From Macrostomum lignano (taxonomy: Eukaryota): a stretch of 64,000 nt of DNA. Below, piece after piece: positions 6,446 to 33,041 of the stretch (position 1 is the stretch's first letter; the number at the start of each line of letters is the position of its first letter). Position numbers and translations under genes: made by a program. The DNA is taken from the NCBI GenBank assembly GCA_002269645.1, contig NIVC01001234.1, forward strand, positions 62,001-126,000, read 5' to 3'. Below the pieces are notes generated by a model. That model had not been told where the DNA came from. It did no database searches and saw only the letters and a list, made by a program, of their open reading frames with translations.

Positions 6446-6689
6446 TCTGCATTTCTTCTTAGCTTAGAGTTCTTGCATCTGCAGCTGCGAACGCGAAGGT
6501 GTAGTCATCTTCCCAATCACAGCGGAGGTCGGGTCGTAGCATTTGTCTGTGACAAGCATTCCACAATCAGGAAGTGTTTCTCTCTATGAATGAATGAACT
6601 GAATGAAAACTGAATGAATGAAATTGATGAAGTTCAGTCACAGGAAAGTAGGCATATGTTATTCCTACGATCAAACTTTCTGAAGATCC

Positions 6690-7590: not shown

Positions 7591-9467
7591 ATCTTTTCTC
7601 TCATCCCATCTCTCATCTCTCATCTTCTTTTACCTCTCCTTTCCACTCTCATCAGACCCGCAGCCATAAGCTGTATTCTTATCCGGCTCTTTAGGTAAAA
7701 AAGTTTGCTAATCCCTGGTTTAGAGCCGCTGGGAATACCTCCGGTTAAAAGTGGGAGCACCAATAATGCTACAAGCAATTTAATGGTACCAGGCTAATCG
7801 TCAAGCAACTCTTTCCGAGTGTGATTGAGGAAATCGTGACAGGATCTGGCAAAAGGCAATCTGTGTTTATTAGGAGAATTTCAAAGATTCCATCAAACTT
7901 GTCTTTTTGTTCAAGCAAGTACGAATCCCAGTGAAGGCTTTCTTTTCCCTGACCAAAACAAAGACCAGGGACAGTCGCTAAGAATTTTCGCAATCAACTT
8001 TGAGTCGCCCTGCTTCTCATATGGCCAACTTTATGTTGAATGCTCATGCGTTGGAACTGCAGCTGGCCTCCTCATCTTTGCTCCCCTGAGAAACAATGAA
8101 TTTGGCTTTGCTGATGCCTTGCATACTTACTCTGCTTAGTTTCTCTAGAAAGTTTAAACAGTATAATTACTTGTCTCCTCTCACTTAGTCTTAGACCAGG
8201 GGCGCAGCCAGGAATTCTTTATGGGGGGGGGGGCAAGACTACTTTAAAAGAGGGGCCCAGCCTCTGGAAAGATGGGCGCAAAGCCTGCTGGAAAAGGGCG
8301 CCACATGCTTTGCCAGTTGATTGGGAGGGGGCAGCAATCGCCATCGCTTCTTCATTTTACTTAAAAGCTACCAATTAATCTCAACTCCTTACTTAAAAAT
8401 ATATGCAATTAGATTATTGTCCTGATGCTGTAAGTGTTTGTATAATCTTAGATTCTATTCTTTGTATTCTATCCAAAAATATACTTTGTAACACAAATTT
8501 ACTCCAAGTTTTTATTACCTCTATACTTAAACAAGTTTTTGTTTGAGTATGACTTCAGACAAAGGATTGCATACAAAAAACCCTAAGGTAGTTCCCGGGA
8601 TTTTAATTTCGCGGGTTCAACATCCGCGGATTTCAACACACATATACCGACAGACCATTTTTAGTATATAGGAATAAGAGAGGCGGATCTTAACATTTTA
8701 CTCGATAAAACGGAAAAAAGTTGTCCAAAGTCGCACAGGTGTCAAGCAGGAACTGGAGCGGGGTGGGCCAACTCAGTGTTTCTCGCGGAACTGCTGATCT
8801 TCCCCTGGGGTGGGATGCGACTCAAGACTCGCCGCTCGATCTTGGCAGCAGCTGCCAGGCGCTGGGCTCATGCACGCGCGTTCCGGAGAGCGGCCGACGG
8901 CCTGCGCCAGCAGAGGTAGAGAAGCCGCCTCGACTGTCCGCATTTTTGCTGACTCAAATTGCTGAGGCTCCACGACAAAAGTGGGGGGGGGGGGTAATTC
9001 AGGAAATCGATAGCCCGTCAAGGAAGATAAAATTGGCCAAGCCGCGCTGCGCTCGAAACTGCGCTCTCTTCTTCGAGGAGAAACTCTACAAGCTCGCGAC
9101 ATGTTACCAACCATGGCTCAAGCCGGTTGGTGCCTGCTCTTTGCAATTTGCCTGGGCGGCATAACTGCCTGTAAGTTTCTTTCAGGGTCGGTTGCATTGC
9201 GGGTAGTGTTGTCAGGAGTCAAATTACCTTCATAGCTCGTAGATGATTAGTCTCTACTCGCAGACTAAGAACTTACTCTAAAGAACTGCTTGGATTGTTT
9301 TGGTGGTGAGGATATCTTTAAAATTCTGTGGGATGTTTCCATATCTTGGCGCATATTTATAGTTAATTGAAAGTAATGCGCCGCTGCAAGCAGATTATCC
9401 TGCAAGCACGTGATTGGCACAAGTTGTCATCCAGCAGTGACTGAATAGAGCAATTGTATAGCTCCTA

Positions 9468-12400
9468 ATGCTGACGAAGAATGCCTTAGTGGTGCTACTC
9501 GTAGTATGAGACTATTGTATCATAATTACTGTTGCATCTTTTCAATCCATGTTGTCAGATTTTATAGCATCTGCGCCTATTCAGTATTTGCCTTTAGGAA
9601 TGAAACCAAAATTGTAGAAGGATTTTTATGGGAAATATTTCTACGAAGAGCAATTATCACTTTTGCGGTGGTGATTAAAACTTTCAAACTTTGTACATCG
9701 AAGCTCAAAGAAAGAACAAAACGTCCTAAAAAACACGCATTGTAGCCCATGGCTTCGAATACAAAGGATGCTACAAAGATAGTAGAAATCGTGACCTGCC
9801 AAAACTGGCACAGTCATCGTCCAGCATGAGCGTGGAGAGGTGTGGCCGTCTGTGCAGCTCGTACCGCTACTTCGGTGTGCAGTTCTCCAAGGAGTGCTGG
9901 TGCGGCAACTCGTACGGCAAGCACGGAAAGCGACCAGGACGCGAGTGCAACATGGCCTGCAGAGGCAACTCCAGGGAGAAGTGCGGCTCTCACTGGAGAA
10001 ATAATGTCTATGCAACTCGGTCGACTGGCTCCCGTGAGTACATTCTCCGCATCAACACCTGAAAACGCTTGACATGACGCTGGCCAGAAAAGAGAGTACA
10101 GTATCGATATATACGCGCCGCTTGCCCTTGTAGACAGCACATGAACTGCAGGGTCCACCAATGAAAGGGTTAGCTTTAAAATCGCTGTCTCTCTAGGCTC
10201 AGTGGATCTAAAATAAACATTACTAGCTCGTACGTTTAGTTCTCCTTGACAGTGGTCGGCAAAAATTTAAGGTCTATTTCAACTTGCAAGTAGCCTATTT
10301 AATGATGACATGAGTGGTGGCCGATAGAATTACAAAATACAGTTACGTACTACGTACATGAAAGCTTAGAGAGGTGGCCAGACAAAGCGAAGAAAACGGG
10401 AGAGAATGATGTGCATTTACGATGCGTGCGGATAATATAGGTTACTTAGTTAGTGCCCAGAGTTTAGCATTTGGCCCTACCCCAAACACTATACGAGCGT
10501 ATATCCAAGTTTCCTTGATGCATCTGTAATATAGCCCATTTTGATGAATCCTGACGGTGTCTACACGGATCAGAGTCCCTGATCTAAAAATATCCCGATG
10601 CCTTTGTCATCAGTTTAACTCCTTACGCATTTTGTGCTCACCAAATTCAATTGTGTTTTACAAATGCTCACTTGGCTTACTTTATTAAATTCGATATGGA
10701 TTTAAAGTTTTTAATATGCAGTTGCCGTTTCTAATATGCAACACTAGCTCGTAAAACTTACACTCGAATTTTGAATAATATTATGAAACGTTAAATGCCC
10801 ACGAGCGCTAGGCTGCAAACGGGTGAGATCTACACCGTCAAGCCTGTCGAGCTACAAGTCCAAGGTCGGTCAGTGCTTCGAGTTCCGAGTGACTGGTCGA
10901 TTGAGAGGAAACGTGTGGGGGAGCGGGATCTACACTGCCGACTCGTCGCTTAGCAAGGCCGCCGTACATGCAGGAATTGTGAGGAACGGCCAGACAAAGT
11001 ACATCCGTGTTCGAGTGTTGAGGGGTCGCAGCTCGTACCGATCCACTAGACGCAACGGCGTCAAGACGAGACGCTACGGCAGATACAGGCTTAGCTACAA
11101 GTTCATCGGCTCGCGATCGGTTCCTAGCAAGAAGCCTAGGTGTAAGTTTCGCTAGTCGTATGTCATGGTATTCTGAAGCTGTTTATAATGAAAATCACTT
11201 TGATTTCGATAAAATATACATTTCCTATCGCCGACTGAGTTTTACGTTGCATGTGTAATCACAATGAAGAAAAAGTATAATATTTTTTGCAGCATGCCCA
11301 TCAGGATCAAGGTTGTCTGTGACCTCGCGTCGCACCTGCCGCTGTGCTCCGATATCTCCTGGACGGAAGTTGGGCTCGCTGATCTTTGTTATTGACATTA
11401 CCGGAAGCATGGGAAGCGTGATTAACTCGGTAAAGAGCAACATCCGGCGAATTCTCTCTGCTAACACTCGATTTAGCAACTATGTTGTTGCAACCTTTGG
11501 CGATCCGTATGTGAGGCGAGTAATCAAGACGAGGAGTATCACTGCTGTGAGAAACTTCCTGAAAAGATTGTCTGCCAGAGGAGGCGGTGACTGTCCCGAG
11601 TACGCTATGTCAGGAGCTCTGGATGCTGCAAAGAGCGCGAACTCGAACTCCGTCATGCTCCTGTTTACTGACGCTTCAGCCAAGGACAAGAGACGAGTGG
11701 GCCAGGTGTCTTCACTGGCGAAGAGGAAGCGAATTCGAGTGTTTACCGTCGAGAGCGGAAACATGTGTGGAAAAGCGCCAGAGTTTAAGCAGTTGGCCCG
11801 GAAGTCTTTTGGAGAGGTCTCCCGACTACGATCTGGCACTTTCAACAAGGTAGGGCGTTTTATTAGAGATTCAGCTATGGCATGGCTTGCTCACGGACAA
11901 CAAGAACAACGACAAACGTATAAGTATTTTCTACTCGTATTTCTATCCACAGTTGATGGAGTTCCTCAGACGCGCCGTAAAAGGAAGAATCAGCTTCAGT
12001 GCATTCCCAAGAAGCCCGTCGGCGCTCAAAAGGGCTCTCAGAGGCAGTGAGTATTTCTTTTTAACATACCTTACATACGAGCAACAGTTGCAGCCAAGAG
12101 GATTATCCGTGGCATTGAAACCTACTCGTAATTTACTACTTATGGTATGAAACAGGCGCGGAGCCTGTTAAATTGGATAATAATTTACTATAAAAGGGAC
12201 TCCACAAACATCAGTTACCTGACAGTAACGATTTCAATAATATAATTGCAGAATGCCGTTGTCGAATTGTCAGGCACCGTCGATGCAAACGAGTTTCATC
12301 GCGTGAGTGCCAGATTATTTTTTATGGTGCAATACCACTATCTAAATTCGGCTTTTAAATAATATTATGAAACGTTAAATGCCCACGAGCGCTAGGCTGC

Positions 12401-18400: not shown

Positions 18401-21400
18401 CATACCTTACATACGAGCAACAGTTGCAGCCAAGAGGATTATCCGTGGCATTGAAACCTACTCGTAATTTACTACTTATGGTATGAAACAGGCGCGGAGC
18501 CTGTTAAATTGGATAATAATTTACTATAAAAGGGACTCCACAAACATCAGTTACCTGACAGTAACGATTTCAATAATATAATTGCAGAATGCCGTTGTCG
18601 AATTGTCAGGCACCGTCGATGCAAACGAGTTTCATCGCGTGAGTGCCAGATTATTTTTTATGGTGCAATACCACTATCTAAATTCGGCTTTTAAATAATA
18701 TTATGAAACGTTAAATGCCCACGAGCGCTAGGCTGCAAACGGGTGAGATCTACACCGTCAAGCCTGTCGAGCTACAAGTCCAAGGTCGGTCAGTGCTTCG
18801 AGTTCCGAGTGACTGGTCGATTGAGAGGAAACGTGTGGGGGAGCGGGATCTACACTGCCGACTCGTCGCTTAGCAAGGCCGCCGTACATGCAGGAATTGT
18901 GAGGAACGGCCAGACAAAGTACATCCGTGTTCGAGTGTTGAGGGGTCGCAGCTCGTACCGATCCACTAGACGCAACGGCGTCAAGACGAGACGCTACGGC
19001 AGATACAGGCTTAGCTACAAGTTCATCGGCTCGCGATCGGTTCCTAGCAAGAAGCCTAGGTGTAAGTTTCGCTAGTCGTATGTCATGGTATTCTGAAGCT
19101 GTTTATAATGAAAATCACTTTGATTTCGATAAAATATACATTTCCTATCGCCGACTGAGTTTTACGTTGCATGTGTAATCACAATGAAGAAAAAGTATAA
19201 TATTTTTTGCAGCATGCCCATCAGGATCAAGGTTGTCTGTGACCTCGCGTCGCACCTGCCGCTGTGCTCCGATATCTCCTGGACGGAAGTTGGGCTCGCT
19301 GATCTTTGTTATTGACATTACCGGAAGCATGGGAAGCGTGATTAACTCGGTAAAGAGCAACATCCGGCGAATTCTCTCTGCTAACACTCGATTTAGCAAC
19401 TATGTTGTTGCAACCTTTGGCGATCCGTATGTGAGGCGAGTAATCAAGACGAGGAGTATCACTGCTGTGAGAAACTTCCTGAAAAGATTGTCTGCCAGAG
19501 GAGGCGGTGACTGTCCCGAGTACGCTATGTCAGGAGCTCTGGATGCTGCAAAGAGCGCGAACTCGAACTCCGTCATGCTCCTGTTTACTGACGCTTCAGC
19601 CAAGGACAAGAGACGAGTGGGCCAGGTGTCTTCACTGGCGAAGAGGAAGCGAATTCGAGTGTTTACCGTCGAGAGCGGAAACATGTGTGGAAAAGCGCCA
19701 GAGTTTAAGCAGTTGGCCCGGAAGTCTTTTGGAGAGGTCTCCCGACTACGATCTGGCACTTTCAACAAGGTAGGGCGTTTTATTAGAGATTCAGCTATGG
19801 CATGGCTTGCTCACGGACAACAAGAACAACGACAAACGTATAAGTATTTTCTACTCGTATTTCTATCCACAGTTGATGGAGTTCCTCAGACGCGCCGTAA
19901 AAGGAAGAATCAGCTTCAGTGCATTCCCAAGAAGCCCGTCGGCGCTCAAAAGGGCTCTCAGAGGCAGTGAGTATTTCTTTTTAACATACCTTACATACGA
20001 GCAACAGTTGCAGCCAAGAGGATTATCCGTGGCATTGAAACCTACTCGTAATTTACTACTTATGGTATGAAACAGGCGCGGAGCCTGTTAAATTGGATAA
20101 TAATTTACTATAAAAGGGACTCCACAAACATCAGTTACCTGACAGTAACGATTTCAATAATATAATTGCAGAATGCCGTTGTCGAATTGTCAGGCACCGT
20201 CGATGCAAACGAGTTTCATCGCGTGAGTGCCAGATTATTTTTTATGGTGCAATACCACTATCTAAATTCGGCTTTTAAATAATATTATGAAACGTTAAAT
20301 GCCCACGAGCGCTAGGCTGCAAACGGGTGAGATCTACACCGTCAAGCCTGTCGAGCTACAAGTCCAAGGTCGGTCAGTGCTTCGAGTTCCGAGTGACTGG
20401 TCGATTGAGAGGAAACGTGTGGGGAGCGGGATCTACACTGCCGACTCGTCGCTTAGCAAGGCCGCCGTACATGCAGGAATTGTGAGGAACGGCCAGACAA
20501 AGTACATCCGTGTTCGAGTGTTGAGGGGTCGCAGCTCGTACCGATCCACTAGACGCAACGGCGTCAAGACGAGACGCTACGGCAGATACAGGCTTAGCTA
20601 CAAGTTCATCGGCTCGCGATCGGTTCCTAGCAAGAAGCCTAGGTGTAAGTTTCGCTAGTCGTATGTCATGGTATTCTGAAGCTGTTTATAATGAAAATCA
20701 CTTTGATTTCGATAAAATATACATTTCCTATCGCCGACTGAGTTTTACGTTGCATGTGTAATCACAATGAAGAAAAAGTATAATATTTTTTGCAGCATGC
20801 CCATCAGGATCAAGGTTGTCTGTGACCTCGCGTCGCACCTGCCGCTGTGCTCCGATATCTCCTGGACGGAAGTTGGGCTCGCTGATCTTTGTTATTGACA
20901 TTACCGGAAGCATGGGAAGCGTGATTAACTCGGTAAAGAGCAACATCCGGCGAATTCTCTCTGCTAACACTCGATTTAGCAACTATGTTGTTGCAACCTT
21001 TGGCGATCCGTATGTGAGGCGAGTAATCAAGACGAGGAGTATCACTGCTGTGAGAAACTTCCTGAAAAGATTGTCTGCCAGAGGAGGCGGTGACTGTCCC
21101 GAGTACGCTATGTCAGGAGCTCTGGATGCTGCAAAGAGCGCGACTCGAACTCCGTCATGCTCCTGTTTACTGACGCTTCAGCCAAGGACAAGAGACGAGT
21201 GGGCCAGGTGTCTTCACTGGCGAAGAGGAAGCGAATTCGAGTGTTTACCGTCGAGAGCGGAAACATGTGTGGAAAAGCGCCAGAGTTTAAGCAGTTGGCC
21301 CGGAAGTCTTTTGGAGAGGTCTCCCGACTACGATCTGGCACTTTCAACAAGGTAGGGCGTTTTATTAGAGATTCAGCTATGGCATGGCTTGCTCACGGAC

Positions 21401-24400
21401 AACAAGAACAACGACAAACGTATAAGTATTTTCTACTCGTATTTCTATCCACAGTTGATGGAGTTCCTCAGACGCGCCGTAAAAGGAAGAATCAGCTTCA
21501 GTGCATTCCCAAGAAGCCCGTCGGCGCTCAAAAGGGCTCTCAGAGGCAGTGAGTATTTCTTTTTAACATACCTTACATACGAGCAACAGTTGCAGCCAAG
21601 AGGATTATCCGTGGCATTGAAACCTACTCGTAATTTACTACTTATGGTATGAAACAGGCGCGGAGCCTGTTAAATTGGATAATAATTTACTATAAAAGGG
21701 ACTCCACAAACATCAGTTACCTGACAGTAACGATTTCAATAATATAATTGCAGAATGCCGTTGTCGAATTGTCAGGCACCGTCGATGCAAACGAGTTTCA
21801 TCGCGTGAGTGCCAGATTATTTTTTATGGTGCAATACCACTATCTAAATTCGGCTTTTAAATAATATTATGAAACGTTAAATGCCCACGAGCGCTAGGCT
21901 GCAAACGGGTGAGATCTACACCGTCAAGCCTGTCGAGCTACAAGTCCAAGGTCGGTCAGTGCTTCGAGTTCCGAGTGACTGGTCGATTGAGAGGAAACGT
22001 GTGGGGGAGCGGGATCTACACTGCCGACTCGTCGCTTAGCAAGGCCGCCGTACATGCAGGAATTGTGAGGAACGGCCAGACAAAGTACATCCGTGTTCGA
22101 GTGTTGAGGGGTCGCAGCTCGTACCGATCCACTAGACGCAACGGCGTCAAGACGAGACGCTACGGCAGATACAGGCTTAGCTACAAGTTCATCGGCTCGC
22201 GATCGGTTCCTAGCAAGAAGCCTAGGTGTAAGTTTCGCTAGTCGTATGTCATGGTATTCTGAAGCTGTTTATAATGAAAATCACTTTGATTTCGATAAAA
22301 TATACATTTCCTATCGCCGACTGAGTTTTACGTTGCATGTGTAATCACAATGAAGAAAAAGTATAATATTTTTTGCAGCATGCCCATCAGGATCAAGGTT
22401 GTCTGTGACCTCGCGTCGCACCTGCCGCTGTGCTCCGATATCTCCTGGACGGAAGTTGGGCTCGCTGATCTTTGTTATTGACATTACCGGAAGCATGGGA
22501 AGCGTGATTAACTCGGTAAAGAGCAACATCCGGCGAATTCTCTCTGCTAACACTCGATTTAGCAACTATGTTGTTGCAACCTTTGGCGATCCGTATGTGA
22601 GGCGAGTAATCAAGACGAGGAGTATCACTGCTGTGAGAAACTTCCTGAAAAGATTGTCTGCCAGAGGAGGCGGTGACTGTCCCGAGTACGCTATGTCAGG
22701 AGCTCTGGATGCTGCAAAGAGCGCGGACTCGAACTCCGTCATGCTCCTGTTTACTGACGCTTCAGCCAAGGACAAGAGACGAGTGGGCCAGGTGTCTTCA
22801 CTGGCGAAGAGGAAGCGAATTCGAGTGTTTACCGTCGAGAGCGGAAACATGTGTGGAAAAGCGCCAGAGTTTAAGCAGTTGGCCCGGAAGTCTTTTGGAG
22901 AGGTCTCCCGACTACGATCTGGCACTTTCAACAAGGTAGGGCGTTTTATTAGAGATTCAGCTATGGCATGGCTTGCTCACGGACAACAAGAACAACGACA
23001 AACGTATAAGTATTTTCTACTCGTATTTCTATCCACAGTTGATGGAGTTCCTCAGACGCGCCGTAAAAGGAAGAATCAGCTTCAGCGCATTCCAAGAAGC
23101 CCGTCGGCGCTCAAAAGGCTCTCAGAGGCAGTGAGTATTTCTTTTTAACATACCTTACATACGAGCAACAGTTGCAGCCAAGAGGATTATCCGTGGCATT
23201 GAAACCTACTCGTAATTTACTACTTATGGTATGAAACAGGCGCGGAGCCTGTTAAATTGGATAATAATTTACTATAAAAGGGACTCCACAAACATCAGTT
23301 ACCTGACAGTAACGATTTCAATAATATAATTGCAGAATGCCGTTGTCGAATTGTCAGGCACCGTCGATGCAAACGAGTTTCATCGCGTGAGTGCCAGATT
23401 ATTTTTTATGGTGCAATACCACTATCTAAATTCGGCTTTTAAATAATATTATGAAACGTTAAATGCCCACGAGCGCTAGGCTGCAAACGGGTGAGATCTA
23501 CACCGTCAAGCCTGTCGAGCTACAAGTCCAAGGTCGGTCAGTGCTTCGAGTTCCGAGTGACTGGTCGATTGAGAGGAAACGTGTGGGGGAGCGGGATCTA
23601 CACTGCCGACTCGTCGCTTAGCAAGGCCGCCGTACATGCAGGAATCGTGAGGAACGGCCAGACAAAGTACATCCGTGTTCGAGTGTTGAGGGGTCGCAGC
23701 TCGTACCGATCCACTAGACGCAACGGCGTCAAGACGAGACGCTACGGCAGATACAGGCTTAGCTACAAGTTCATCGGCTCGCGATCGGTTCCTAGCAAGA
23801 AGCCTAGGTGTAAGTTTCGCTAGTCGTATGTCATGGTATTCTGAAGCTGTTTATAATGAAAATCACTTTGATTTCGATAAAATATACATTTCCTATCGCC
23901 GACTGAGTTTTACGTTGCATGTGTAATCACAATGAAGAAAAAGTATAATATTTTTTGCAGCATGCCCATCAGGATCAAGGTTGTCTGTGACCTCGCGTCG
24001 CACCTGCCGCTGTGCTCCGATATCTCCTGGACGGAAGTTGGGCTCGCTGATCTTTGTTATTGACATTACCGGAAGCATGGGAAGCGTGATTAACTCGGTA
24101 AAGAGCAACATCCGGCGAATTCTCTCTGCTAACACTCGATTTAGCAACTATGTTGTTGCAACCTTTGGCGATCCGTATGTGAGGCGAGTAATCAAGACGA
24201 GGAGTATCACTGCTGTGAGAAACTTCCTGAAAAGATTGTCTGCCAGAGGAGGCGGTGACTGTCCCGAGTACGCTATGTCAGGAGCTCTGGATGCTGCAAA
24301 GAGCGCGGACTCGAACTCCGTCATGCTCCTGTTTACTGACGCTTCAGCCAAGGACAAGAGACGAGTGGGCCAGGTGTCTTCACTGGCGAAGAGGAAGCGA

Positions 24401-27400
24401 ATTCGAGTGTTTACCGTCGAGAGCGGAAACATGTGTGGAAAAGCGCCAGAGTTTAAGCAGTTGGCCCGGAAGTCTTTTGGAGAGGTCTCCCGACTACGAT
24501 CTGGCACTTTCAACAAGGTAGGGCGTTTTATTAGAGATTCAGCTATGGCATGGCTTGCTCACGGACAACAAGAACAACGACAAACGTATAAGTATTTTCT
24601 ACTCGTATTTCTATCCACAGTTGATGGAGTTCCTCAGACGCGCCGTAAAAGGAAGAATCAGCTTCAGCGCATTTCCAAGAAGCCCGTCGGCGCTCAAAAA
24701 GGCTCTCAGAGGCAGTGAGTATTTCTTTTTAACATACCTTACATACGAGCAACAGTTGCAGCCAAGAGGATTATCCGTGGCATTGAAACCTACTCGTAAT
24801 TTACTACTTATGGTATGAAACAGGCGCGGAGCCTGTTAAATTGGATAATAATTTACTATAAAAGGGACTCCACAAACATCAGTTACCTGACAGTAACGAT
24901 TTCAATAATATAATTGCAGAATGCCGTTGTCGAATTGTCAGGCACCGTCGATGCAAACGAGTTTCATCGCGTGAGTGCCAGATTATTTTTTATGGTGCAA
25001 TACCACTATCTAAATTCGGCTTTTAAAAACTATTAAACTAATCTATTAATTAAACTATAATTAAACTATAAAATTATTAAACTATATCTACTAATAGATG
25101 TCTCAATGAACAATGGTTTATAGACTAGACTAATCCAAGAGAGGTGGGCGATGCCAGCCGATTGAATCTAGTTGGAGCCTTTAATATTCGTAGTCGTAAC
25201 TAAAATGACGCCCTTCTGACCTTCCAGCGGCCGGAGTGAAGTACGTCGGCTGCTTTAAGGACAATCGCTACAGGGATTTGCCGGTAGTTTACACTGCCAA
25301 CTAAAAGACGACAAAGGCTTACTGCTTCCGCTATTGTCGAGCCAAGGGCTACAGGTACTTTGGTCTGCAAAACGGCAATGCGTGCACCTGCGGAAACACC
25401 GTCGGTCGGTATGGAAAAGCGAAGAGCAAGGATTGCGCCAGGTCCACCTGTAAGGGCGACAAGAGGTCCAAATGTGGTGGACCATGGAGGAACAGCGTCT
25501 TCACAACCGGACTGAAGCCCAAGAGCTTCAAGAGTAAGTGTGCAGTCAAGCAGAAAATTCGCTTTCCACGCTCGCTCGTAGGCTCGTACGGTATATTAGA
25601 TATTTTTGAATGTAAAACGAGATTGCTCTGTACGGTTTGGATGGGGTTTTGCTGACCTGCATGTGCCCACTATTTCTCTTTTAAGCACCTGGAATGTCTC
25701 ACATTGGCTGCTTTGTTGACGGCCGGAGACGCGATCTTCCAACTCTGGCAGGAAAAGGCAGCATGACTGTTGGAAGGTGCTACGGACTATGCAAGAAAAA
25801 GGGATTCCGATTCTTTGGCGTTCAGATAGGAAAACAGTGCTGGTGCGGCAACCACTACGGTCGCTACGGCCGACGCGACAAACGCGAGTGCCGCTACCAG
25901 TGCAGAGGAGACAAGACGACCTACTGCGGAGGCGCGTGGAGAAACAATGTCTACGCGACGGGTGTTGTCGTCGCCAGCAAAGGTAACCGAGTCTGTCAAC
26001 AGGTTTACGCTTGTAGCTTTCTGGAGATCCAAGCAATCCTAGTGTACTGCTGTTTTTCGTTGCGCCATCTAGCCAGTTAGCCAGCAGCACTACTAATAGA
26101 TGTCTCAATGAACAATGGTTTAGAGACTAGACTAATCCAAGAGAGGTGGGCGATGCCAGCCGATTGAATCTAGTTGGAGCCTTTAATATTCGTAGTCGTA
26201 ACTAAAATGACGCCCTTCTGACCTTCCAGCGGCCGGAGTGAAGTACGTCGGCTGCTTTAAGGACAATCGCTACAGGGATTTGCCGGTAGTTTACACTGCC
26301 AACTACAAGACGACAAAGGCTTACTGCTTCCGCTATTGTCGAGCCAAGGGCTACAGGTACTTTGGTCTGCAAAACGGCAATGCGTGCACCTGCGGAAACA
26401 CCGTCGGTCGGTATGGAAAAGCGAAGAGCAAGGATTGCGCCAGGTCCACCTGTAAGGGCGACAAGAGGTCCAAATGTGGTGGACCATGGAGGAACAGCGT
26501 CTTCACAACCGGACTGAAGCCCAAGAGCTTCAAGAGTAAGTGTGCAGTCAAACGGAAAATTCGCTTTCCACGCTCGCTCGTAGGCTCGTAGGGTACATAA
26601 GACATTTTGTAAAGTAAAACGGTGAAGTGATACATTTTGGCCCTGAAAGTTTCAATCCAGTTTGAATGTATTTCCAACCAATGAACGCGCTCCAGCAAGC
26701 AAAAGCTGAGCACACGATCCCAGTCTTAGCTAATGAAAAGTAGACATCCTTTCCCTACAACAGACTGAACCTTCGGTTCCCCCGAACAATTAGAACCTAC
26801 CATAGAATTGAGTTAATCTCGAGATTGCGAACACCAAATACAATACAACGGTCAGTAAGTTAACATCAATTGATTGCATCATCAGGAAAAGTTAGTCGAA
26901 TCCGCCGCCTTAGTTATTTGGCTCTCACATTGGTAATTGAAGTTATTATTGAGCTTAGTAGTGAGAGATCAGAAGACCAAAGACACCCAAGTTATAGACA
27001 TATATAAAAAATTTCAACGGGCTGGCTCTGTCCGTGTCTTGGATTAGGAGCCAACCAGCTGGGGTTTTACTGACCTGCGTGTGCCCACTATTTCTTTTTT
27101 AAGCACCTGAATGTCTCACATTGGCTGCTTTGTTGACGGCCGGAGGCGCGATCTTCCAACTGTGGGAGGAAAAGGCAGCATAACTGTTGGAAGGTGCTAC
27201 GGACTGTGCAAGAAAAAGGGATTCCGATTCTTTGGCGTTCAGATAGGAAAACAGTGCTGGTGCGGCAACCACTACGGTCGCTACGGCCGACGCGACAAAC
27301 GCGAGTGCCGCTACCAGTGCAGAGGAGACAAGACGACCTACTGTGGCGGCTCCTGGAGAAACGACGTGTACGCTACCGGACTCGAAGAGCACGCCTCCGG

Positions 27401-30400
27401 AGTTACCCTACTTGGCTGCTTCCGCGACAATTCGAAGCGCGACTTGCCCCTTGTACACGGCGCCGGTCACCGGACCACAAAGGCGTACTGTCTGAAGTAC
27501 TGCAAGTCTCGCGGCTACAGGTACTTTGGCCTCCAGGCTGGATCTGCGTGCACCTGCGGCAACAAATATGGCAGCTTTGGCCGAGTCAATGCAAAGCAGT
27601 GCAGAACGCGCTGTAGAGGCGACAAAAGACGAACCTGCGGCGGCTCTTGGAGAAACTCTGTCTACTCGACTGGAATCGGCAGCAAGCCTGTTCGTCGTGA
27701 GTACAACAGTACAGATTCGCAATTGATTGCTTTTTTGTCCACCTAGCTCGTGTTTATATTAGTTTGCAGCTCTCAGTTGAGAACTATGCGATGCCTCACT
27801 AATTGCGCGCGCCGTTTCTCTTCCTTCCATAAATACGAGTAGTTTCAAGCAATATAAGGTGGCTATTTTGAAATTGTGCGCAAATTAGTCTGACATCTTG
27901 AAACTTTAAATGCATTAAATATCATCAGCGAGAGCGTGGGCGTCCAAGAGTTGAGCCTTTCTCATAAGTTGTTTACATAAACGACAGCAAATAATGTGTA
28001 CAGTAGTAGTCTGTCGCTACCGCTTTCAGTGCCCGGATTGAAGCATCTCGGCTGCTATCTGGACAAGAGCTCCAGAGATCTTAGAAAGCTGGTTCTCTCC
28101 GGATCAGTTACTGTGCCAAAGTGCTACAAGGCGTGCAAAGCCAGGAAATATCGCTTCTTCGGTGTGCAAAATGGCTACCAGTGCTGGTGCGGCAACCACT
28201 ATGGCAGGTACAGAATCCGATCAAACTTGGAGTGCAGAGTACAGTGCAGAGGAGACAAGTCGACCTACTGCGGAGGCGCGTGGAGAAACAATGTCTACGC
28301 GACGGGTGTTGTCGTCGCCAGCAAAGGTAACCGAGTCTGTCAACAGGTTTACGCTTGTAGCTTTCTGGAGATCCAAGCAATCCTAGTGTACTGCTGTTTT
28401 TCGTTGCGCCATCTAGCCATTTAGCCAGCAGCACTACTAATAGATGTCTCAATGAACAATGGTTTATAGACTAGACTAATCCAAGAGAGGTGGGCGATGC
28501 CAGCCGATTGAATCTAGTTGGAGCCTTTAATATCGTAGTCGTAACTAAAATGACGCCCTTCTGACCTTCCAGCGGCCGGAGTGAAGTACGTCGGCTGCTT
28601 CAAGGACAATCGCTACAGGGATTTGCCGGTAGTTTACACTGCCAACTACAAGACGACAAAGGCTTACTGCTTCCGCTATTGTCGAGCCAAGGGCTACAGG
28701 TACTTTGGTCTGCAAAACGGCAATGCGTGCACCTGCGGAAACACCGTCGGTCGGTATGGAAAAGCGAAGAGCAAGGATTGCGCCAGGTCCACCTGTAAGG
28801 GCGACAAGAGGTCCAAATGTGGTGGACCATGGAGGAACAGCGTCTTCACAACCGGACTGAAGCCCAAGAGCTTCAAGAGTAAGTGTGCAGTCAAGCAGAA
28901 AATTCGCTTTCCACGCTCGCTCGTAGGCTCGTACGGTATATTAGATATTTTTGAATGTAAAACGAGATTGCTCTGTACGGTTTGGATGGGGTTTTGCTGA
29001 CCTGCATGTGCCCACTATTTCTCTTTTAAGCACCTGGAATGTCTCACATTGGCTGCTTTGTTGACGGCCGGAGACGCGATCTTCCAACTCTGGCAGGAAA
29101 AGGCAGCATGACTGTTGGAAGGTGCTACGGACTATGCAAGAAAAAGGGATTCCGATTCTTTGGCGTTCAGATAGGAAAACAGTGCTGGTGCGGCAACCAC
29201 TACGGTCGCTACGGCCGACGCGACAAACGCGAGTGCCGCTACCAGTGCAGAGGAGACAAGACGACCTACTGCGGAGGCGCGTGGAGAAACAATGTCTACG
29301 CGACGGGTGTTGTCGTCGCCAGCAAAGGTAACCGAGTCTGTCAACAGGTTTACGCTTGTAGCTTTCTGGAGATCCAAGCAATCCTAGTGTACTGCTGTTT
29401 TTCGTTGCGCCATCTAGCCAGTTAGCCAGCAGCACTACTAATAGATGTCTCAATGAACAATGGTTTAGAGACTAGACTAATCCAAGAGAGGTGGGCGATG
29501 CCAGCCGATTGAATCTAGTTGGAGCCTTTAATATTCGTAGTCGTAACTAAAATGACGCCCTTCTGACCTTCCAGCGGCCGGAGTGAAGTACGTCGGCTGC
29601 TTTAAGGACAATCGCTACAGGGATTTGCCGGTAGTTTACACTGCCAACTACAAGACGACAAAGGCTTACTGCTTCCGCTATTGTCGAGCCAAGGGCTACA
29701 GGTACTTTGGTCTGCAAAACGGCAATGCGTGCACCTGCGGAAACACCGTCGGTCGGTATGGAAAGCGAAGAGCAAGGATTGCGCCAGGTCCACCTGTAAG
29801 GGCGACAAGAGGTCCAAATGTGGTGGACCATGGAGGAACAGCGTCTTCACAACCGGACTGAAGCCCAAGAGCTTCAAGAGTAAGTGTGCAGTCAAACGGA
29901 AAATTCGCTTTCCACGCTCGCTCGTAGGCTCGTAGGGTACATAAGACATTTTGTAAAGTAAAACGGTGAAGTGATACATTTTGGCCCTGAAAGTTTCAAT
30001 CCAGTTTGAATGTATTTCCAACCAATGAACGCGCTCCAGCAAGCAAAAGCTGAGCACACGATCCCAGTCTTAGCTAATGAAAAGTAGACATCCTTTCCCT
30101 ACAACAGACTGAACCTTCGGTTCCCCCGAACAATTAGAACCTACCATAGACTTGAGTTAATCTCGAGATTGCGAACACCAAATACAATACAACGGTCAGT
30201 AAGTTAACATCAATTGATTGCATCATCAGGAAAAGTTAGTCGAATCCGCCGCCTTAGTTATTTGGCTCTCACATTGGTAATTGAAGTTATTATTGAGCTT
30301 AGTAGTGAGAGATCAGAAGACCAAAGACACCCAAGTTATAGACATATATAAAAAATTTCAACGGGCTGGCTCTGTCCGTGTCTTGGATTAGGAGCCAACC

Positions 30401-33041
30401 AGCTGGGGTTTTACTGACCTGCGTGTGCCCACTATTTCTTTTTTAAGCACCTGGAATGTCTCACATTGGCTGCTTTGTTGACGGCCGGAGGCGCGATCTT
30501 CCAACTGTGGGAGGAAAAGGCAGCATAACTGTTGGAAGGTGCTACGGACTGTGCAAGAAAAAGGGATTCCGATTCTTTGGCGTTCAGATAGGAAAACAGT
30601 GCTGGTGCGGCAACCACTACGGTCGCTACGGCCGACGCGACAAACGCGAGTGCCGCTACCAGTGCAGAGGAGACAAGACGACCTACTGTGGCGGCTCCTG
30701 GAGAAACGACGTGTACGCTACCGGACTCGAAGAGCACGCCTCCGGAGTTACCCTACTTGGCTGCTTCCGCGACAATTCGAAGCGCGACTTGCCCCTTGTA
30801 CACGGCGCCGGTCACCGGACCACAAAGGCGTACTGTCTGAAGTACTGCAAGTCTCGCGGCTACAGGTACTTTGGCCTCCAGGCTGGATCTGCGTGCACCT
30901 GCGGCAACAAATATGGCAGCTTTGGCCGAGTCAATGCAAAGCAGTGCAGAACGCGCTGTAGAGGCGACAAAAGACGAACCTGCGGCGGCTCTTGGAGAAA
31001 CTCTGTCTACTCGACTGGAATCGGCAGCAAGCCTGTTCGTCGTGAGTACAACAGTACAGATTCGCAATTGATTGCTTTTTTGTCCACCTAGCTCGTGTTT
31101 ATATTAGTTTGCAGCTCTCAGTTGAGAACTATGCGATGCCTCACTAATTGCGCGCGCCGTTTCTCTTCCTTCCATAAATACGAGTAGTTTCAAGCAATAT
31201 AAGGTGGCTATTTTGAAATTGTGCGCAAATTAGTCTGACATCTTGAAACTTTAAATGCATTAAATATCATCAGCGAGAGCGTGGGCGTCCAAGAGTTGAG
31301 CCTTTCTCATAAGTTGTTTACATAAACGACAGCAAATAATGTGTACAGTAGTAGTCTGTCGCTACCGCTTTCAGTGCCCGGATTGAAGCATCTCGGCTGC
31401 TATCTGGACAAGAGCTCCAGAGATCTTAGAAAGCTGGTTCTCTCCGGATCAGTTACTGTGCCAAAGTGCTACAAGGCGTGCAAAGCCAGGAAATATCGCT
31501 TCTTCGGTGTGCAAAATGGCTACCAGTGCTGGTGCGGCAACCACTATGGCAGGTACAGAATCCGATCAAACTTGGAGTGCAGAGTACAGTGCAGAGGAGA
31601 CAAGTCGACCTACTGCGGAGGCGCATGGAGAAACAACGTGTTTACAACTGGATATAATCCGAAAGCCTCAGGTGGGTCGGTTGTACAGAATTATTCAGGA
31701 ATATAAAGTAGTTTCAAATGTGCGAATATTGCTTATATTTCAGTGAAAACCTGCCCATCGGGATCGAAGGCAAAGACTGTGAAGCGCCTTGTATGTGGCT
31801 GTGCCCCCGCTTCGGGATCTCAGAGGCTTGGTTCTTTGGTGATTGTTGTCGACACAACGGGCAGCATGAGCAGTGTTTATAAATCTGTCCGCCGTAGCAT
31901 TTCAAGGATTTTGTCGGCAAACAGGCGGTTCCAGAATTTTGTTGTTTCAAGCTACGGGGATCCTTATAAGCGGCACGTCATTCGAACAAAATCCATTTCG
32001 AGGGTTCAGCGATTTCTCAACGGGCTTAAAATTAGAGGTGGTGGCGATTGTCCTGAGTATTCAATGTCTGCCGTGATTGACGCGGCGAAATTGGCTGATA
32101 AAGATTCTGTTTTGCTTCTGTTTACTGATGCATCGGCTAAGGACCGCAGTTTGACGTCTAGTGCAGCAAAGTTGTTGAAGTCGAAACGAATTCGTTTTAT
32201 CGCAATCGGCAGCGGTCGTCTTTGTGGCCGCGGTGCTGAGTATGATGTTCTCGCGAAAAATACTGGTGGACTGGTAGCCAAGTTGAACCGTCGAGTTTCC
32301 GATAAGGTGACAGTTGAAATGGTATCTCTGTGACTGTACTTTTCCTTTCATTTTACATTATAACGTATTCGGATTTTTTAATTTTTAGGTGATGAAACTA
32401 ATTGAACTAGCAGCTAAAGGGAAAATGAGCTTCAGTGCTTTCCCGAAGAATACTCGCGATCTTGCTAATGCTCTGAGAGGAAGTAAGTTTTTAATCCGGG
32501 TTTATTGCTTCTACGAGCTATTTCTTATATTTTGTTGCGGCTGACGCTGCTTAATGTTTCCAAAATTATTTTCAGAATGCCCGTGCCGAACTGTGACGCG
32601 TCATATCTGCGCGATGCCACATTCAGGTGAGAGTCTGTAATAGTCTTTCTTCGGGTTGTGCATGTTGAGATTCTATACTCACGGGTTAATTTATTTTGCG
32701 GCTTTAGCGTCAGTGGTAATTAGATTACTTTCCTTTTACTTTAACAGTATGAATTTTGTTCATTTTTAGCTTCGCTTGGGTGCTTCCTGGACGATCCCAA
32801 GTACCCAGACTTCTCGGTTGTTGCTGGCCGGGGCAAGATGACAGTGTGGAAGTGCAACAACCTGTGCAAAGCTAAGAAGTTCTCGTATTTCGGTCTAAAG
32901 AACGGCTCGAAGTGCAGCTGCGGTGACAACTACGGAAACAGTGGCGGTGCAAAAGAGTCCAAGTGCAACAAACGCTGCTCTGGAAATTCCAAAGACAAAT
33001 GCGGCGGCACCGCGACCAATAGCGTCTACAAGGTTGACTAA
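9468..33041 (+). CDS. Giant modular WSC/LCCL/vWA extracellular protein, ~4,700 aa: WSC-(LCCL-vWA-linker)x9-WSCx12-vWA-linker-WSC
   Basis: Every exon has GT/AG borders and the phases chain from 9746 to the stop at 33039-33041. The reconstructed exons total ~14.15 kb once single-base lesions are corrected. The 5' start at 9468 (MLTKNALVVLLV, signal-like) is tentative. As assembled, the frame is interrupted at ~20421, ~21142, ~23091, ~23115, 25302 (TAA), ~27108 and ~29762. Confidence 0.75.
9746..10033 (+). CDS. First WSC-domain exon of the giant gene
   Basis: 288 nt, phase 1-1. Translation HGFEYKGCYKDSRNRDLP...CGRLC..YRYFGVQFSKECWCGN...ECNMACRGNSREKCGSHWRNNVY shows the 8-Cys WSC pattern. Confidence 0.85.
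10812..11141 (+). CDS. LCCL-domain exon (copy 1 of 9)
   Basis: The sequence contains the LCCL signature VWGSGIYTADSSLSKAAVHAG...GRSSYRSTRRNGV. Acceptor CGCTAG, donor GTAAGT. Confidence 0.85.
11293..11849 (+). CDS. Hemicentin/VWA7-type von Willebrand A exon (copy 1 of 9)
   Basis: Motifs IFVIDITGSM, VATFGDP, GGGDCPE and LFTDASAKD include the MIDAS-type residues. The ORF-track extension past 11849 is intron read-through. Confidence 0.9.
25228..31671 (+). CDS. Array of ten WSC-coding exons (12 WSC domains) in the order A-B-A-C-D-A-B-A-C-D'
   Basis: A: 25228-25533, 26230-26535, 28573-28878, 29575-29879. B: 25686-25982, 29031-29327. C (double WSC): 27104-27696, 30448-31041. D: 28030-28326, 31375-31671. 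All are phase 1-1. Periods are 1,002 and 3,345 bp. Confidence 0.85.
31744..33041 (+). CDS. Diverged vWA cassette and terminal WSC exon of the giant gene
   Basis: Exons are 31744-32306 (vWA: VVDTTGSM, GGGDCPE, FTDA), 32389-32482 (94 nt), 32576-32626 (51 nt) and 32770-33041 (WSC plus TAA). The 94-nt and 51-nt linker exons match the array cassette in size and phase. An ATTAAA lies at 33128. Confidence 0.88.

What the first reader, a model, noticed from the sequence alone, without database searches (positions are those of the whole stretch)
9468..33041. One ~4,700-aa secreted-type polyprotein built from 14 WSC, 9 LCCL and 10 vWA domains
Seen: what the ORF track shows as scattered ORFs is one continuous splice path. 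It runs from a WSC exon through 9 x 344-aa cassettes, ten WSC exons, a diverged vWA cassette and a last WSC exon with the stop codon. No TM segment is evident. Knowledge: WSC is carbohydrate-binding, LCCL is linked to LPS/glycan binding, and hemicentin-type vWA is an adhesion domain. Inference: a highly multivalent lectin or adhesive, such as a mucus, glue, egg-capsule, ejaculate or microbe-agglutinating protein. I do not recognise this domain combination from any described protein.
Basis: partly seen in the sequence, partly recalled or inferred. Interest (0 to 1): 0.85.

Follow-up and report, generated by a model that had tools for sequence, protein, structure and literature searches.

The report
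Giant secreted WSC–LCCL–vWA flatworm protein gene

Summary
The window is Macrostomum lignano genomic DNA. The described structure is real. Next come nine tandem 1,584-bp units, each with four exons (LCCL, VWA_4, two linker exons; 344 aa). Then come ten WSC exons (12 domains), a diverged VWA_4 cassette and a last WSC exon with the stop at 33039-33041. Pfam confirms 14 WSC, 9 LCCL and 10 VWA_4. All junctions are GT/AG and phase-compatible, and there is no TM segment.

The path is not continuous as assembled. Six 1-bp deletions and one TAA break it, and straight translation stops at residue 2239. All seven lesions lie in near-identical repeats, three of them at sites where the copies differ, so most are probably assembly errors. 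Units 1-6 are 100% identical, introns included, so copy number is uncertain. A 97-99.6% identical duplicate contig has only one cassette.

Repaired, the protein is about 4,700 aa, 524 kDa, pI 11.2 and net charge about +840. The best reading is a secreted polycationic multivalent glycan/matrix binder from a gland secretion; the tissue is unknown. LCCL next to vWA recalls cochlin. No other protein found here has the full combination. Only fragmentary, uncharacterised models exist in databases.

The parts
9101..9170 (+). Exon 1: ATG plus signal peptide MLPTMAQAGWCLLFAICLGGITA, ending in phase 1 (donor GTAAGT).
   Evidence: P0003 (NCBI BOX15_Mlig023956g1, an RNA-guided model) begins with this peptide joined to the WSC exon. 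Sequence shown. It is the highest hydropathy stretch of the protein.
9746..10033 (+). Exon 2: first WSC domain (8 Cys), phase 1-1.
   Evidence: Pfam WSC E=2.2e-19. Both junctions are reproduced in P0003.
10812..25035 (+). Tandem array of nine 1,584-bp units. Unit starts are 10812, 12396, 13980, 15564, 17148, 18732, 20316, 21898 and 23480. Units 1-6 are 100% identical, introns included.
   Evidence: Self-BLAST and per-copy differences.
10812..11141 (+). LCCL exon of unit 1 (330 nt, phase 1-1). The same offsets apply in every unit.
   Evidence: Pfam LCCL E=2.5e-15. Matches cochlin LCCL 1jbi at E=2e-5. AlphaFold2 pLDDT is 90-98 for this domain.
11293..11849 (+). VWA_4 exon of unit 1 (557 nt, phase 1 to 0), with an N-terminal CPxG...CxC motif and DITGS / GGGDCPE / FTDA (MIDAS-like) residues.
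   Evidence: Pfam VWA_4 PF25106 E=3.7e-34. The motifs are kept in 10 of 10 copies. Foldseek finds MIDAS-type vWA folds.
11953..12046 (+). Linker exon C (94 nt, phase 0 to 1). It encodes the C-terminal helices of the vWA domain.
   Evidence: Conserved in length and sequence in the diverged tenth cassette and in paralogues P0122 and P0133. Modelled as helices.
12252..12302 (+). Linker exon D (51 nt, phase 1-1): basic Cys-rich connector KCRCRIVRHRRCKRVSS.
   Evidence: The frame is confirmed by P0002 and by the homologous connector GCCKIVRKRICKRIRSHC in paralogue P0122. Low model confidence.
20420..21143 (+). Unit 7 lesions: 1-bp deletions after 20420 (G5 to G4, LCCL exon) and after 21142 (vWA exon, at a site that is A or G among units).
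   Evidence: The frame is lost from here and the first stop is at residue 2239.
23091..23117 (+). Unit 8 lesions: two 1-bp deletions in linker exon C, both at sites where unit 9 has substitutions.
24971..25227 (+). Intron between the cassette block and the WSC block. It contains an AT-rich (TAATTAAACTA)n stretch with four ATTAAA motifs (25032-25081). Read-through from the last linker exon would stop after 17 codons.
   Evidence: 4 of the 9 such motifs found in 9.8 kb of introns lie here. There is no ATG plus signal peptide in this interval.
25228..31671 (+). WSC block: ten phase 1-1 exons carrying 12 WSC domains. A1 25228-25533, B1 25686-25982, A2 26230-26535, C1 27104-27696 (2 WSC), D1 28030-28326, A3 28573-28878, B2 29031-29327, A4 29575-29879, C2 30448-31041 (2 WSC), D2 31375-31671. 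The block is organised as two ~3,345-bp copies at 99.75% identity.
   Evidence: Pfam finds 13 WSC in the C-terminal 1,509 aa. The B to A, C to D and D to A joins are reproduced in P0121 and P0274.
25302..25304 (+). In-frame TAA in exon A1. The codon is TAC in A2, A3 and A4, and in all four A-type exons of L001.
27108..27109 (+). 1-bp deletion (GG to G) six bases into exon C1.
   Evidence: The four L001 C exons are intact at 594 nt.
29761..29762 (+). 1-bp deletion (A4 to A3) in exon A4. The same deletion is present in the fourth A-type exon of L001.
31744..32306 (+). Tenth, diverged VWA_4 exon (52% aa identity to the array copies). No LCCL exon precedes it.
   Evidence: Pfam VWA_4 E=1.3e-29. 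pN 0.35 against pS 0.85 compared with unit 1.
32389..32482 (+). Linker exon C of the tenth cassette (94 nt).
32770..33041 (+). Last WSC exon, with stop codon TAA at 33039-33041. ATTAAA lies at 33128.
   Evidence: Pfam WSC E=5.4e-17..

Best explanation
This is one large M. lignano gene, about 24 kb from 9101 to 33041, with 51 exons and about 14.2 kb of CDS. It encodes a giant secreted modular protein: signal peptide, WSC, 9 x [LCCL, Cys motif, VWA_4, helical linker, CxC connector], 12 WSC, VWA_4, WSC. The cassette array arose by very recent tandem duplication or conversion of a four-exon module. That module is itself a lineage-specific VWA_4 cassette, shared with paralogues Mlig025149 and Mlig022224, into which a phase 1-1 LCCL exon was inserted.

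The mature product would be about 4,700 aa and 524 kDa, with 207 Cys, pI about 11.2 and net charge about +840. I propose that it acts as a polycationic, multivalent cross-linker of anionic glycoconjugates in an extracellular gland secretion (seminal or prostate fluid, adhesive, cement or mucus). The WSC modules would bind carbohydrate. The vWA modules would give metal-dependent protein-protein contacts. The charge would give strong polyanion binding, as shown experimentally for the KR-regions of Mlig-ap1.

Shown here: gene anatomy, domains, signal peptide, absence of a TM segment, charge, and purifying selection on the exons. Inferred: single transcript, ligand binding, tissue, and that most of the seven frame lesions are assembly errors.
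For: Organism and fragment models. Exon model with all GT/AG and matched phases. Junction support from outside proteins: exon 1 to WSC to LCCL to vWA in P0003, vWA to linker C to linker D to LCCL in P0002, and the WSC joins in P0121 and P0274. P0003 comes from an RNA-seq-guided annotation. Domain counts. There is only one ATG plus signal peptide, no TM segment, and no Met plus signal peptide in the cassettes or the WSC block.

pN is below pS in all eight paralogous exon comparisons, while the one intron pair compared (vWA to linker C, unit 1 against the tenth cassette) shows no similarity. Paralogues have the same VWA_4, linker and CxC connector. Charge and mass. LCCL and vWA folds are modelled confidently.

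Lesions look like assembly errors. All seven lie in the highly repeated segments and none in unique exons. Three fall exactly at sites that differ between units. L001 has TAC at the nonsense site and intact C exons, but carries its own different 1-bp deletions. Mlig_3_7, the assembly L001 comes from, is PacBio/Canu polished with short reads. Which assembly the window itself comes from is not known.

Precedent in the same animal: Mlig-ap1 (5,407 aa) and Mlig-ap2 (14,794 aa, 46 repeats) are giant, Cys-rich, cationic and repetitive, and their transcripts were fragmented in short-read data. WSC proteins are common among tail and prostate seminal-fluid candidates.
Against: As assembled, the ORF stops at residue 2239. 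No database protein spans the cassette 9 to WSC block junction. No annotated protein matches the 3' end (tenth vWA plus last WSC) at high identity. One deletion (exon A4) is shared with L001, so it could be real or systematic. Six units identical even in their introns may reflect consensus homogenisation, and L001 has one cassette, so 'nine' is uncertain. A cluster of four ATTAAA motifs sits just after the last cassette. I found no expression, localisation or binding data for this gene. The WSC, LCCL and vWA ligands are inferred from family knowledge only.
Confidence: 0.6

Rival explanations
1. This copy of the locus is a decaying duplicate, that is, a pseudogene or truncated allele. The seven lesions are real, and the working gene is another copy such as the L001-type locus. 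The DV1 line carries extra large chromosomes and much duplicated sequence.
For: Seven frame-breaking lesions. The A4 deletion is shared by two contigs. About 180 Mb of duplicated blocks at 95% identity or more exist in this line. A 97-99.6% identical second locus exists.
Against: Lesions occur only in near-identical repeats and three lie at inter-copy variant sites, the pattern expected of consensus errors. L001 has its own, different 1-bp deletions, including the one that truncates P0003. Units 1-6, unit 9 and all unique exons are intact. Because the modules are phase 1-1, a damaged exon could be skipped without losing frame.
Confidence: 0.2
2. The array as printed is partly an assembly construct. 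The true number and sequence of cassettes differ from what is shown (anywhere from one to many), because reads from different units were merged during consensus or polishing.
For: Six units are 100% identical over 1,584 bp, introns included. There is a transition zone from unit 7 to 8 to 9 in which variant sites become deletions. L001 has one cassette and an (A-C-D)n WSC block instead of A-B-A-C-D. Mlig_3_7, the only M. lignano assembly whose methods I read, is PacBio CLR with short-read polishing; the window's own source assembly is unknown.
Against: Independent ML2-derived fragments (P0001, P0002) contain more than one cassette in tandem. Unit boundaries are exact and in phase. This rival changes the copy number, not the nature of the gene.
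Confidence: 0.3
3. The locus makes two products rather than one. A shorter mRNA ends by intronic polyadenylation just after cassette 9, giving signal peptide, WSC and 9 x [LCCL-vWA] with the tail ...RECQIIFYGAIPLSKFGF. The WSC block is used only in a longer isoform or a separate transcript.
For: Four ATTAAA motifs lie within 50 nt at 25032-25081, immediately after the read-through stop. That is 4 of the 9 such motifs in 9.8 kb of introns. No outside protein spans this junction. The Mlig_3_7 annotation calls separate models on L001.
Against: The WSC block has no ATG plus signal peptide of its own, yet consists of disulfide-rich extracellular domains. Fragment models simply start at the internal Met of 'MSHIGCF'. 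The splice sites 24970 and 25228 are canonical and in phase. Annotation gaps are explained by the deliberate exclusion of repeat-overlapping transcripts. AT-rich introns often contain such hexamers.
Confidence: 0.15
4. The protein is a true polyprotein. Furin-like convertases cut at the RHRR and RCKR motifs in each connector, releasing nine identical ~38-kDa cationic LCCL-vWA (cochlin-like) units plus WSC-rich fragments.
For: Three R-x-[KR]-R motifs per cassette, all clustered in the 25-residue connector. The connector is modelled with low confidence, which fits an exposed segment. Cochlin's LCCL domain is released by proteolysis (my knowledge).
Against: About two such motifs per cassette are expected by chance at 23% K+R (my estimate). 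Paralogue connectors conserve the CxC-x7-C cysteines but not the dibasic motifs, for example CSCRIAKIKKC and SCECREELLISC in P0133. This points to a small disulfide-bonded spacer rather than a cleavage site.
Confidence: 0.1
5. Each 1,584-bp unit is an independently transcribed small gene.
For: None beyond the regular spacing of ORFs.
Against: The cassette has no upstream in-frame ATG with a signal peptide: its Met residues are at positions 150, 216, 232, 268 and 298, and none is followed by a hydrophobic stretch. The LCCL exon starts in phase 1 directly after an AG. P0002 and P0003 join units to their neighbours.
Confidence: 0.03

Closest known systems
Cochlin (COCH) and vitrin (VIT): vertebrate secreted LCCL + vWA proteins
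   Same: Signal peptide and an LCCL domain followed by vWA. The LCCL here matches cochlin LCCL (PDB 1jbi, E=2e-5) and is modelled confidently. Both are extracellular matrix or innate-immunity type proteins (my knowledge).
   Different: The vWA here is the VWA_4 (hemicentin/VWA7) subtype, not the collagen-type vWA. There is one vWA per LCCL, the pair is repeated nine times, and WSC arrays flank it. The LCCL exon has 2 rather than 4 cysteines. The protein is extremely basic. The best LCCL relatives are multi-LCCL proteins (rotifer, newt, bacteria), not cochlin.
Hemicentin / VWA7 N-terminal vWA domain (Pfam VWA_4, PF25106)
   Same: All ten vWA domains hit VWA_4 best (E down to 3.7e-34). The nearest non-flatworm relative is annotated VWA7-like (Actinia) at about 31% identity.
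   Different: No Ig, EGF or G2F modules, and none of the VWA7-associated domains (PF23560, PF25107).
M. lignano paralogues Mlig025149.g1 (P0122, 512 aa) and Mlig022224.g1 (P0133, 4,112 aa)
   Same: Signal peptide and repeated [CPxG..CxC motif, VWA_4, helical linker, CxC-x7-C connector] at 45-48% identity. Both are very K/R- and Cys-rich.
   Different: Neither has LCCL or WSC domains. P0133 continues into VWD and a huge K/R/C-rich region instead.
[quoted passage not shown]
   Same: Same animal. They are giant (5,407 and 14,794 aa), secreted, Cys-rich and built of long tandem repeats, combining carbohydrate- and protein-binding domains. Mlig-ap1 is extremely cationic and its function is blocked by heparin. 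Their transcripts were fragmented in short-read assemblies.
   Different: A different domain set (C-type lectin, vWD/C8/TIL, EGF, TSP-1, LDLa). Expression in adhesive glands is shown for them and is unknown for this gene.
Small WSC-domain prostate / seminal-fluid candidates of M. lignano (e.g. Mlig-pro46, RNA815_80.4)
   Same: Secreted-type WSC proteins from the same species. WSC is one of the commonest annotations among tail and prostate candidates.
   Different: Those transcripts are about 0.7-1.4 kb with one or two WSC domains. None is reported with LCCL or vWA.
Apicomplexan LCCL/lectin adhesive-like proteins (CCp/LAP family)
   Same: LCCL combined with lectin-type modules in large secreted multi-adhesive proteins (my knowledge; not tested here).
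   Different: Different partner domains (discoidin, ricin, SR, NEC), an unrelated lineage, and no tandem cassette array.

Membership tests
WSC domain (Pfam PF01822) | Profile match above the gathering score | tested here: met
   14 domains. Single-exon scores are 62-70 bits against a cut-off of 27.8, and there are 13 stretches in the C-terminal block.
WSC domain (Pfam PF01822) | Eight conserved cysteines per domain | tested here: met
   WSC0 has 8 Cys, and the 1,217-aa WSC block (12 domains) has 97 Cys.
WSC domain (Pfam PF01822) | Carbohydrate binding | not testable with these tools
   Needs glycan arrays or pull-downs.
LCCL domain (Pfam PF03815) | Profile match above the gathering score, and the LCCL fold | tested here: met
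   56.9 bits against a cut-off of 22.6. Cochlin 1jbi at E=2e-5. AlphaFold2 pLDDT 90-98.
LCCL domain (Pfam PF03815) | Canonical four cysteines (two disulfides), as in cochlin | tested here: not met
   Only 2 Cys in the LCCL exon. This resembles the Cys-poor multi-LCCL proteins that are its best hits.
VWA_4 (Pfam PF25106; hemicentin/VWA7-type vWA) | Profile match above the gathering score, and the vWA fold | tested here: met
   118 and 103 bits against a cut-off of 27. Foldseek TM up to 0.65-0.69 to ANTXR and integrin I-domains.
VWA_4 (Pfam PF25106; hemicentin/VWA7-type vWA) | Intact MIDAS (DxSxS...T...D) metal site | tested here: inconclusive
   DxTGS, GGGDCPE and FTDA are kept in 10 of 10 domains. 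The first Ser is Thr, and metal binding was not tested.
Cochlin/vitrin family | Signal peptide, LCCL and two collagen-type vWA domains; orthology to COCH or VIT | tested here: not met
   LCCL-vWA adjacency is present, but the vWA is the VWA_4 subtype. Neither cochlin nor vitrin turned up among the named or Pfam-scanned relatives. The architecture is different.
Hemicentin family | N-terminal VWA_4 followed by long Ig arrays, EGF and a G2F/fibulin end | tested here: not met
   No Ig, EGF or G2F hits anywhere in the protein.
Mlig-ap1 / Mlig-ap2 adhesive proteins | Their domain sets (CTL, vWD-C8-TIL, EGF; or vWD, TIL, LDLa, TSP-1 plus 255/221-aa repeats) and expression in adhesive gland cells | tested here: not met
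   The domain sets differ (against 10, 31). Expression could not be tested.
Furin-processed polyprotein (e.g. nematode polyprotein allergens) | Conserved R-x-K/R-R sites between identical units, and release of the units | tested here: inconclusive
   The motifs are present in each connector but are not conserved in paralogue connectors. Cleavage is not testable here.
Single transcription unit (one gene) | Every exon junction seen in RNA | tested here: inconclusive
   The 5' junctions, the intra- and inter-cassette junctions and the WSC-WSC junctions are mirrored in database models. The cassette 9 to A1 junction and the 3' junctions are not.

The most novel reading that the evidence does not exclude
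The gene is a genuine processed polyprotein. A single ~14-kb mRNA yields, after convertase cleavage at the RHRR/RCKR connectors, nine copies of a 38-kDa polycationic cochlin-like LCCL-vWA unit plus WSC lectin arrays. This would amplify the dose of a microbe- or sperm/egg-coating agglutinin from one transcript. It would be an animal LCCL 'ammunition belt' with no described counterpart, with copy number varying between chromosome copies (1 against 9).
Probability: 0.1. Interest if true: 0.7.

Novelty: new variant of a known kind. Interest (0 to 1): 0.4.

Why it matters
M. lignano is a model for reversible bioadhesion, regeneration and sexual conflict. Its two known glue proteins are also giant, repetitive, cationic and lectin-bearing, and many of its seminal-fluid candidates carry WSC domains. 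A 0.5-MDa, +840-charge protein with 33 binding modules is therefore a concrete new candidate component of one of these secretions, and it is invisible in current annotations, which hold only 165-500-aa fragments.

The locus also gives a clean example of exon shuffling: a phase 1-1 LCCL exon inserted into a lineage-specific VWA_4 cassette, followed by very recent tandem amplification. It shows how repeat-rich genes are broken by long-read consensus errors and by repeat-filtered annotation. It would not change any general principle. Large lineage-specific modular secreted proteins are common in invertebrates.

Tried and rejected
1. I passed whole-frame translations to Pfam, but they were rejected because of stop codons. 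I used stop-free segments and a repaired conceptual protein instead.
I used P0001 instead.
3. I looked for the gene in the literature. 'Mlig023956' is in no paper text, and neither it nor the paralogue IDs are in the supplements of two M. lignano expression papers. No open paper links M. lignano with LCCL, cochlin or vitrin for this gene. The tissue therefore stays unknown.
4. I considered identity with Mlig-ap1/ap2 and rejected it on domain content. P0133 looked Mlig-ap1-like (VWD plus a K/R-rich region), but on reading its sequence I did not see the published Mlig-ap1 peptide SRKPRRKNRKSRKP, and it has VWA_4 domains that the paper does not describe.
5. An alternative frame for linker exon D (NAVVELSGTVDANEFHR, used by P0001) was rejected. 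It cannot be joined in phase to the neighbouring exons, whereas the basic Cys-rich frame is conserved in paralogue P0122.
6. Independent genes per unit were rejected.
7. The Foldseek search added nothing beyond generic vWA neighbours.
8. Antisense ORFs of 84 and 122 aa recurring in each unit are mirror images of the coding exons, and I did not pursue them.
Full report
**What the sequence is.** The cassette translation hits three Macrostomum lignano proteins at 99-100% identity (UniRef A0A1I8JEL7 and A0A1I8JEG0; NCBI BOX15_Mlig023956g1). The window is therefore genomic DNA of this free-living flatworm. The flanks carry unrelated material: SCAN/zinc-knuckle retroelement remnants, an ionotropic-glutamate-receptor-like exon, rhodopsin-type GPCR exons and many minisatellites.

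**Checking the observation: the array.** Self-comparison shows nine head-to-tail 1,584-bp units from 10812 to about 25035. Units 1-6 are 100% identical over the whole unit, introns included. Units 7-9 differ by two, four and five changes within the shared unit (unit 9 then diverges at its 3' end).

Reading the sequence gives four exons per unit: 10812-11141, 11293-11849, 11953-12046 and 12252-12302. All are GT/AG, and they sum to 1,032 nt or 344 aa, closing the frame onto the next unit. Pfam assigns LCCL to the first exon (E=2.5e-15) and VWA_4, the hemicentin/VWA7-type vWA, to the second (E=3.7e-34).

**The rest of the gene.** Upstream, exon 9746-10033 is a WSC domain. Downstream there are ten phase 1-1 WSC exons arranged as two ~3.3-kb copies at 99.75% identity (A-B-A-C-D, twice). 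After them come a diverged VWA_4 exon (31744-32306), its linker exon (32389-32482) and a last WSC exon ending in TAA at 33039-33041. Pfam counts 13 WSC and 1 VWA_4 in the C-terminal 1,509 residues. The totals of 14 WSC, 9 LCCL and 10 VWA_4 are therefore correct.

First, the gene does not begin at 9468. NCBI fragment P0003 starts with MLPTMAQAGWCLLFAICLGGITA joined to the WSC exon. This peptide is encoded at 9101-9170, has a GTAAGT donor, and is a typical signal peptide. It is also the only strongly hydrophobic stretch in the protein.

Second, the path is not continuous in this assembly. Unit 7 lacks one base in the LCCL exon (G5 to G4, after 20420) and one in the vWA exon (after 21142). Unit 8 lacks two bases in linker exon C (after 23091 and 23116). 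Exon C1 lacks a G after 27108, and exon A4 lacks an A after 29761. Exon A1 has TAA where its three paralogues have TAC (25302-25304). Straight translation from the ATG stops at residue 2239. With six single-base repairs the CDS is 14,175 nt, or 4,724 codons, with that one internal stop remaining.

**Are the lesions real?** All seven lie in the near-identical repeats and none in the unique exons. Three fall exactly at positions where the units differ: unit position 829 is A in units 1-6, G in units 8 and 9, and missing in unit 7. Positions 1195 and 1221 are substituted in unit 9 and missing in unit 8. That pattern is what a consensus built from mixed reads produces.

An independent contig gives further evidence. 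L001 (NIVC01000784.1 of Mlig_3_7) is 97-99.6% identical to the window. It has TAC at the nonsense site and intact C exons, but it carries its own different 1-bp deletions in the vWA exon, and these are what truncate P0003. It does share the A4 deletion with the window.

Mlig_3_7, the assembly L001 comes from, was built from PacBio reads with Canu and polished with short reads. Its GenBank annotation is RNA-seq-guided but deliberately drops transcripts overlapping repeats. The sequenced line also carries about 180 Mb of duplicated blocks at 95% identity or more. Which assembly the window itself comes from is not known. I conclude that most lesions are probably assembly errors, but this is an inference. 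The shared A4 deletion and the TAA are the least certain cases.

**Copy number.** L001 has a single cassette and an (A-C-D)n WSC block. The ML2-derived fragments P0001 and P0002 contain more than one cassette. A multi-cassette array therefore exists, but 'nine' and '100% identical' may owe something to consensus homogenisation.

**One gene or many?** Several points support one gene:
- The cassettes have no ATG plus signal peptide of their own.
- P0121 and P0274 reproduce the WSC-WSC joins.
- The WSC block has no start or signal peptide. Fragment models simply begin at the internal Met of 'MSHIGCF'.
- Almost every module is phase 1-1.

Two points remain open. No database protein spans the cassette 9 to A1 junction or the 3' junctions. 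The 257-nt interval after cassette 9 also holds four ATTAAA hexamers right after a read-through stop, so a shorter isoform is possible.

**Are the exons real coding sequence?** Comparing diverged paralogous exons, pN is always well below pS. For example, the vWA of unit 1 against the tenth vWA gives 0.35 against 0.85, and exon lengths are conserved (557/563 nt and 94/94 nt). The one intron pair I compared (vWA to linker C, unit 1 against the tenth cassette) shows no similarity.

**Anatomy of the cassette.** M. lignano paralogues Mlig025149.g1 (P0122) and Mlig022224.g1 (P0133, 4,112 aa) carry the same module without LCCL. The module consists of a CPxG-x10-CxC motif, VWA_4, a helical linker and a CxC-x7-C connector. 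The LCCL exon therefore looks like a phase 1-1 insertion into a lineage-specific VWA_4 cassette.

AlphaFold2 on P0002 models the LCCL at pLDDT 90-98 and the vWA at about 80. Linker exon C forms the C-terminal helices of the vWA, and the connector is modelled with low confidence. Foldseek finds ordinary MIDAS-type vWA domains: ITIH1, integrin I-domains and ANTXR. DxTGS, GGGDCPE and FTDA are kept in all ten vWA domains.

**Properties and likely function.** The mature product would be 4,701 aa and about 524 kDa, with 207 Cys, K+R at 22% against D+E at 4.3%, pI 11.2 and net charge about +840. It has no TM segment and no hydrophobic C-terminus. From family knowledge, WSC is a carbohydrate-binding module, vWA a metal-dependent adhesion module, and LCCL a module of secreted matrix or innate-immunity proteins.

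In the same animal, Mlig-ap1 and Mlig-ap2 are giant, repetitive and Cys-rich, and Mlig-ap1 is cationic. Heparin blocks Mlig-ap1's cohesive role. WSC proteins are frequent among prostate and seminal-fluid candidates.

I therefore commit to a secreted polycationic multivalent cross-linker of anionic glycoconjugates in a gland secretion. The tissue is unknown, because I found no expression data.

The 'cleaved polyprotein' idea has three RxK/RR motifs per connector in its favour. It is weakened because paralogues conserve the cysteines of the connector, not the dibasic sites.

**Comparison with known proteins.** LCCL followed by vWA is the cochlin/vitrin arrangement, and the only PDB sequence hit is cochlin's LCCL. 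This is not a cochlin family member, however: the vWA subtype, the cysteine pattern and the architecture all differ.

In an exhaustive HMMER pass over 1.84 billion representatives, the nine best-scoring relatives I scanned were either multi-LCCL only (rotifer, newt and others) or multi-VWA_4 only (all M. lignano). Apart from M. lignano's own fragments, none of them combined LCCL with VWA_4. No retrieved relative combined WSC with either domain.

**Verdict.** This is a real, correctly dissected and unusual gene architecture. It is already present in databases as uncharacterised fragments, and I found no description of it as a whole gene. It is a new variant of a known kind, the giant modular secreted lectin/adhesion proteins. 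Interest is moderate.

Noticed in passing
L001:13340-22303 (NIVC01000784.1, Mlig_3_7) against window 25088-31671: The duplicate locus arranges its WSC exons as (A-C-D) repeated at least four times with a 2,345-bp period and has no B-type exon. The window has A-B-A-C-D twice with a ~3,345-bp period. The two copies of the gene differ structurally in both repeat blocks.
   Followed up: partly
P0133 (BOX15_Mlig022224g1, 4,112 aa; not in the window): A giant paralogue: signal peptide, two VWA_4 cassettes, VWD, then about 3,000 residues of extremely K/R- and Cys-rich repeats. It resembles the published description of Mlig-ap1's KR-regions but appears to be a different protein and looks uncharacterised.
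   Followed up: partly
window 25032-25086: An AT-rich microsatellite-like insert (TAATTAAACTA)n carries four ATTAAA hexamers in the intron that separates the cassette block from the WSC block. It is a possible alternative poly(A) site.
   Followed up: partly
window 8983-8994: A run of 12 G lies about 110 bp upstream of the start codon, in the presumed promoter or 5'UTR region.
   Followed up: no
window 2-1267 (-) and 6570-7085 (-): Open segments with a SCAN domain (E=9e-14) and a CCHC zinc knuckle. They look like retroelement gag-like remnants upstream of the gene.
   Followed up: partly
window 38978-39865 (+): An exon-sized open segment with a ligand-gated ion channel domain (Lig_chan, E=5e-14), iGluR-like.
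   Followed up: no
window 52525-53559 (+), 58398-59174 (-), 60730-61122 (-): Rhodopsin-family GPCR (7tm_1) coding segments, suggesting at least two GPCR genes in the 3' third of the window.
   Followed up: no
window 3903-4499, 35085-35451, 43959-44265, 47255-47563, 51394-52057, 55880-56256, 56852-57294, 62810-63285, 63666-64000: Nine minisatellite arrays (periods 18-159 bp, 3-29 copies, 84-98% matches). This fits the reported ~15% simple and tandem repeat content of this genome.
   Followed up: no
window 11480-11848 (-) and the same offset in every unit: Recurrent 122-aa and 84-aa antisense ORFs inside the vWA exon of each unit. They are most likely by-products of the coding strand's composition, not genes.
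   Followed up: no
P0001 (UniRef A0A1I8JEL7): This fragment model skips linker exon C, uses linker exon D in another frame and then needs a frame change to re-enter the LCCL exon. It is either an assembly-indel artefact in the ML2 assembly or a hint of exon skipping.
   Followed up: partly
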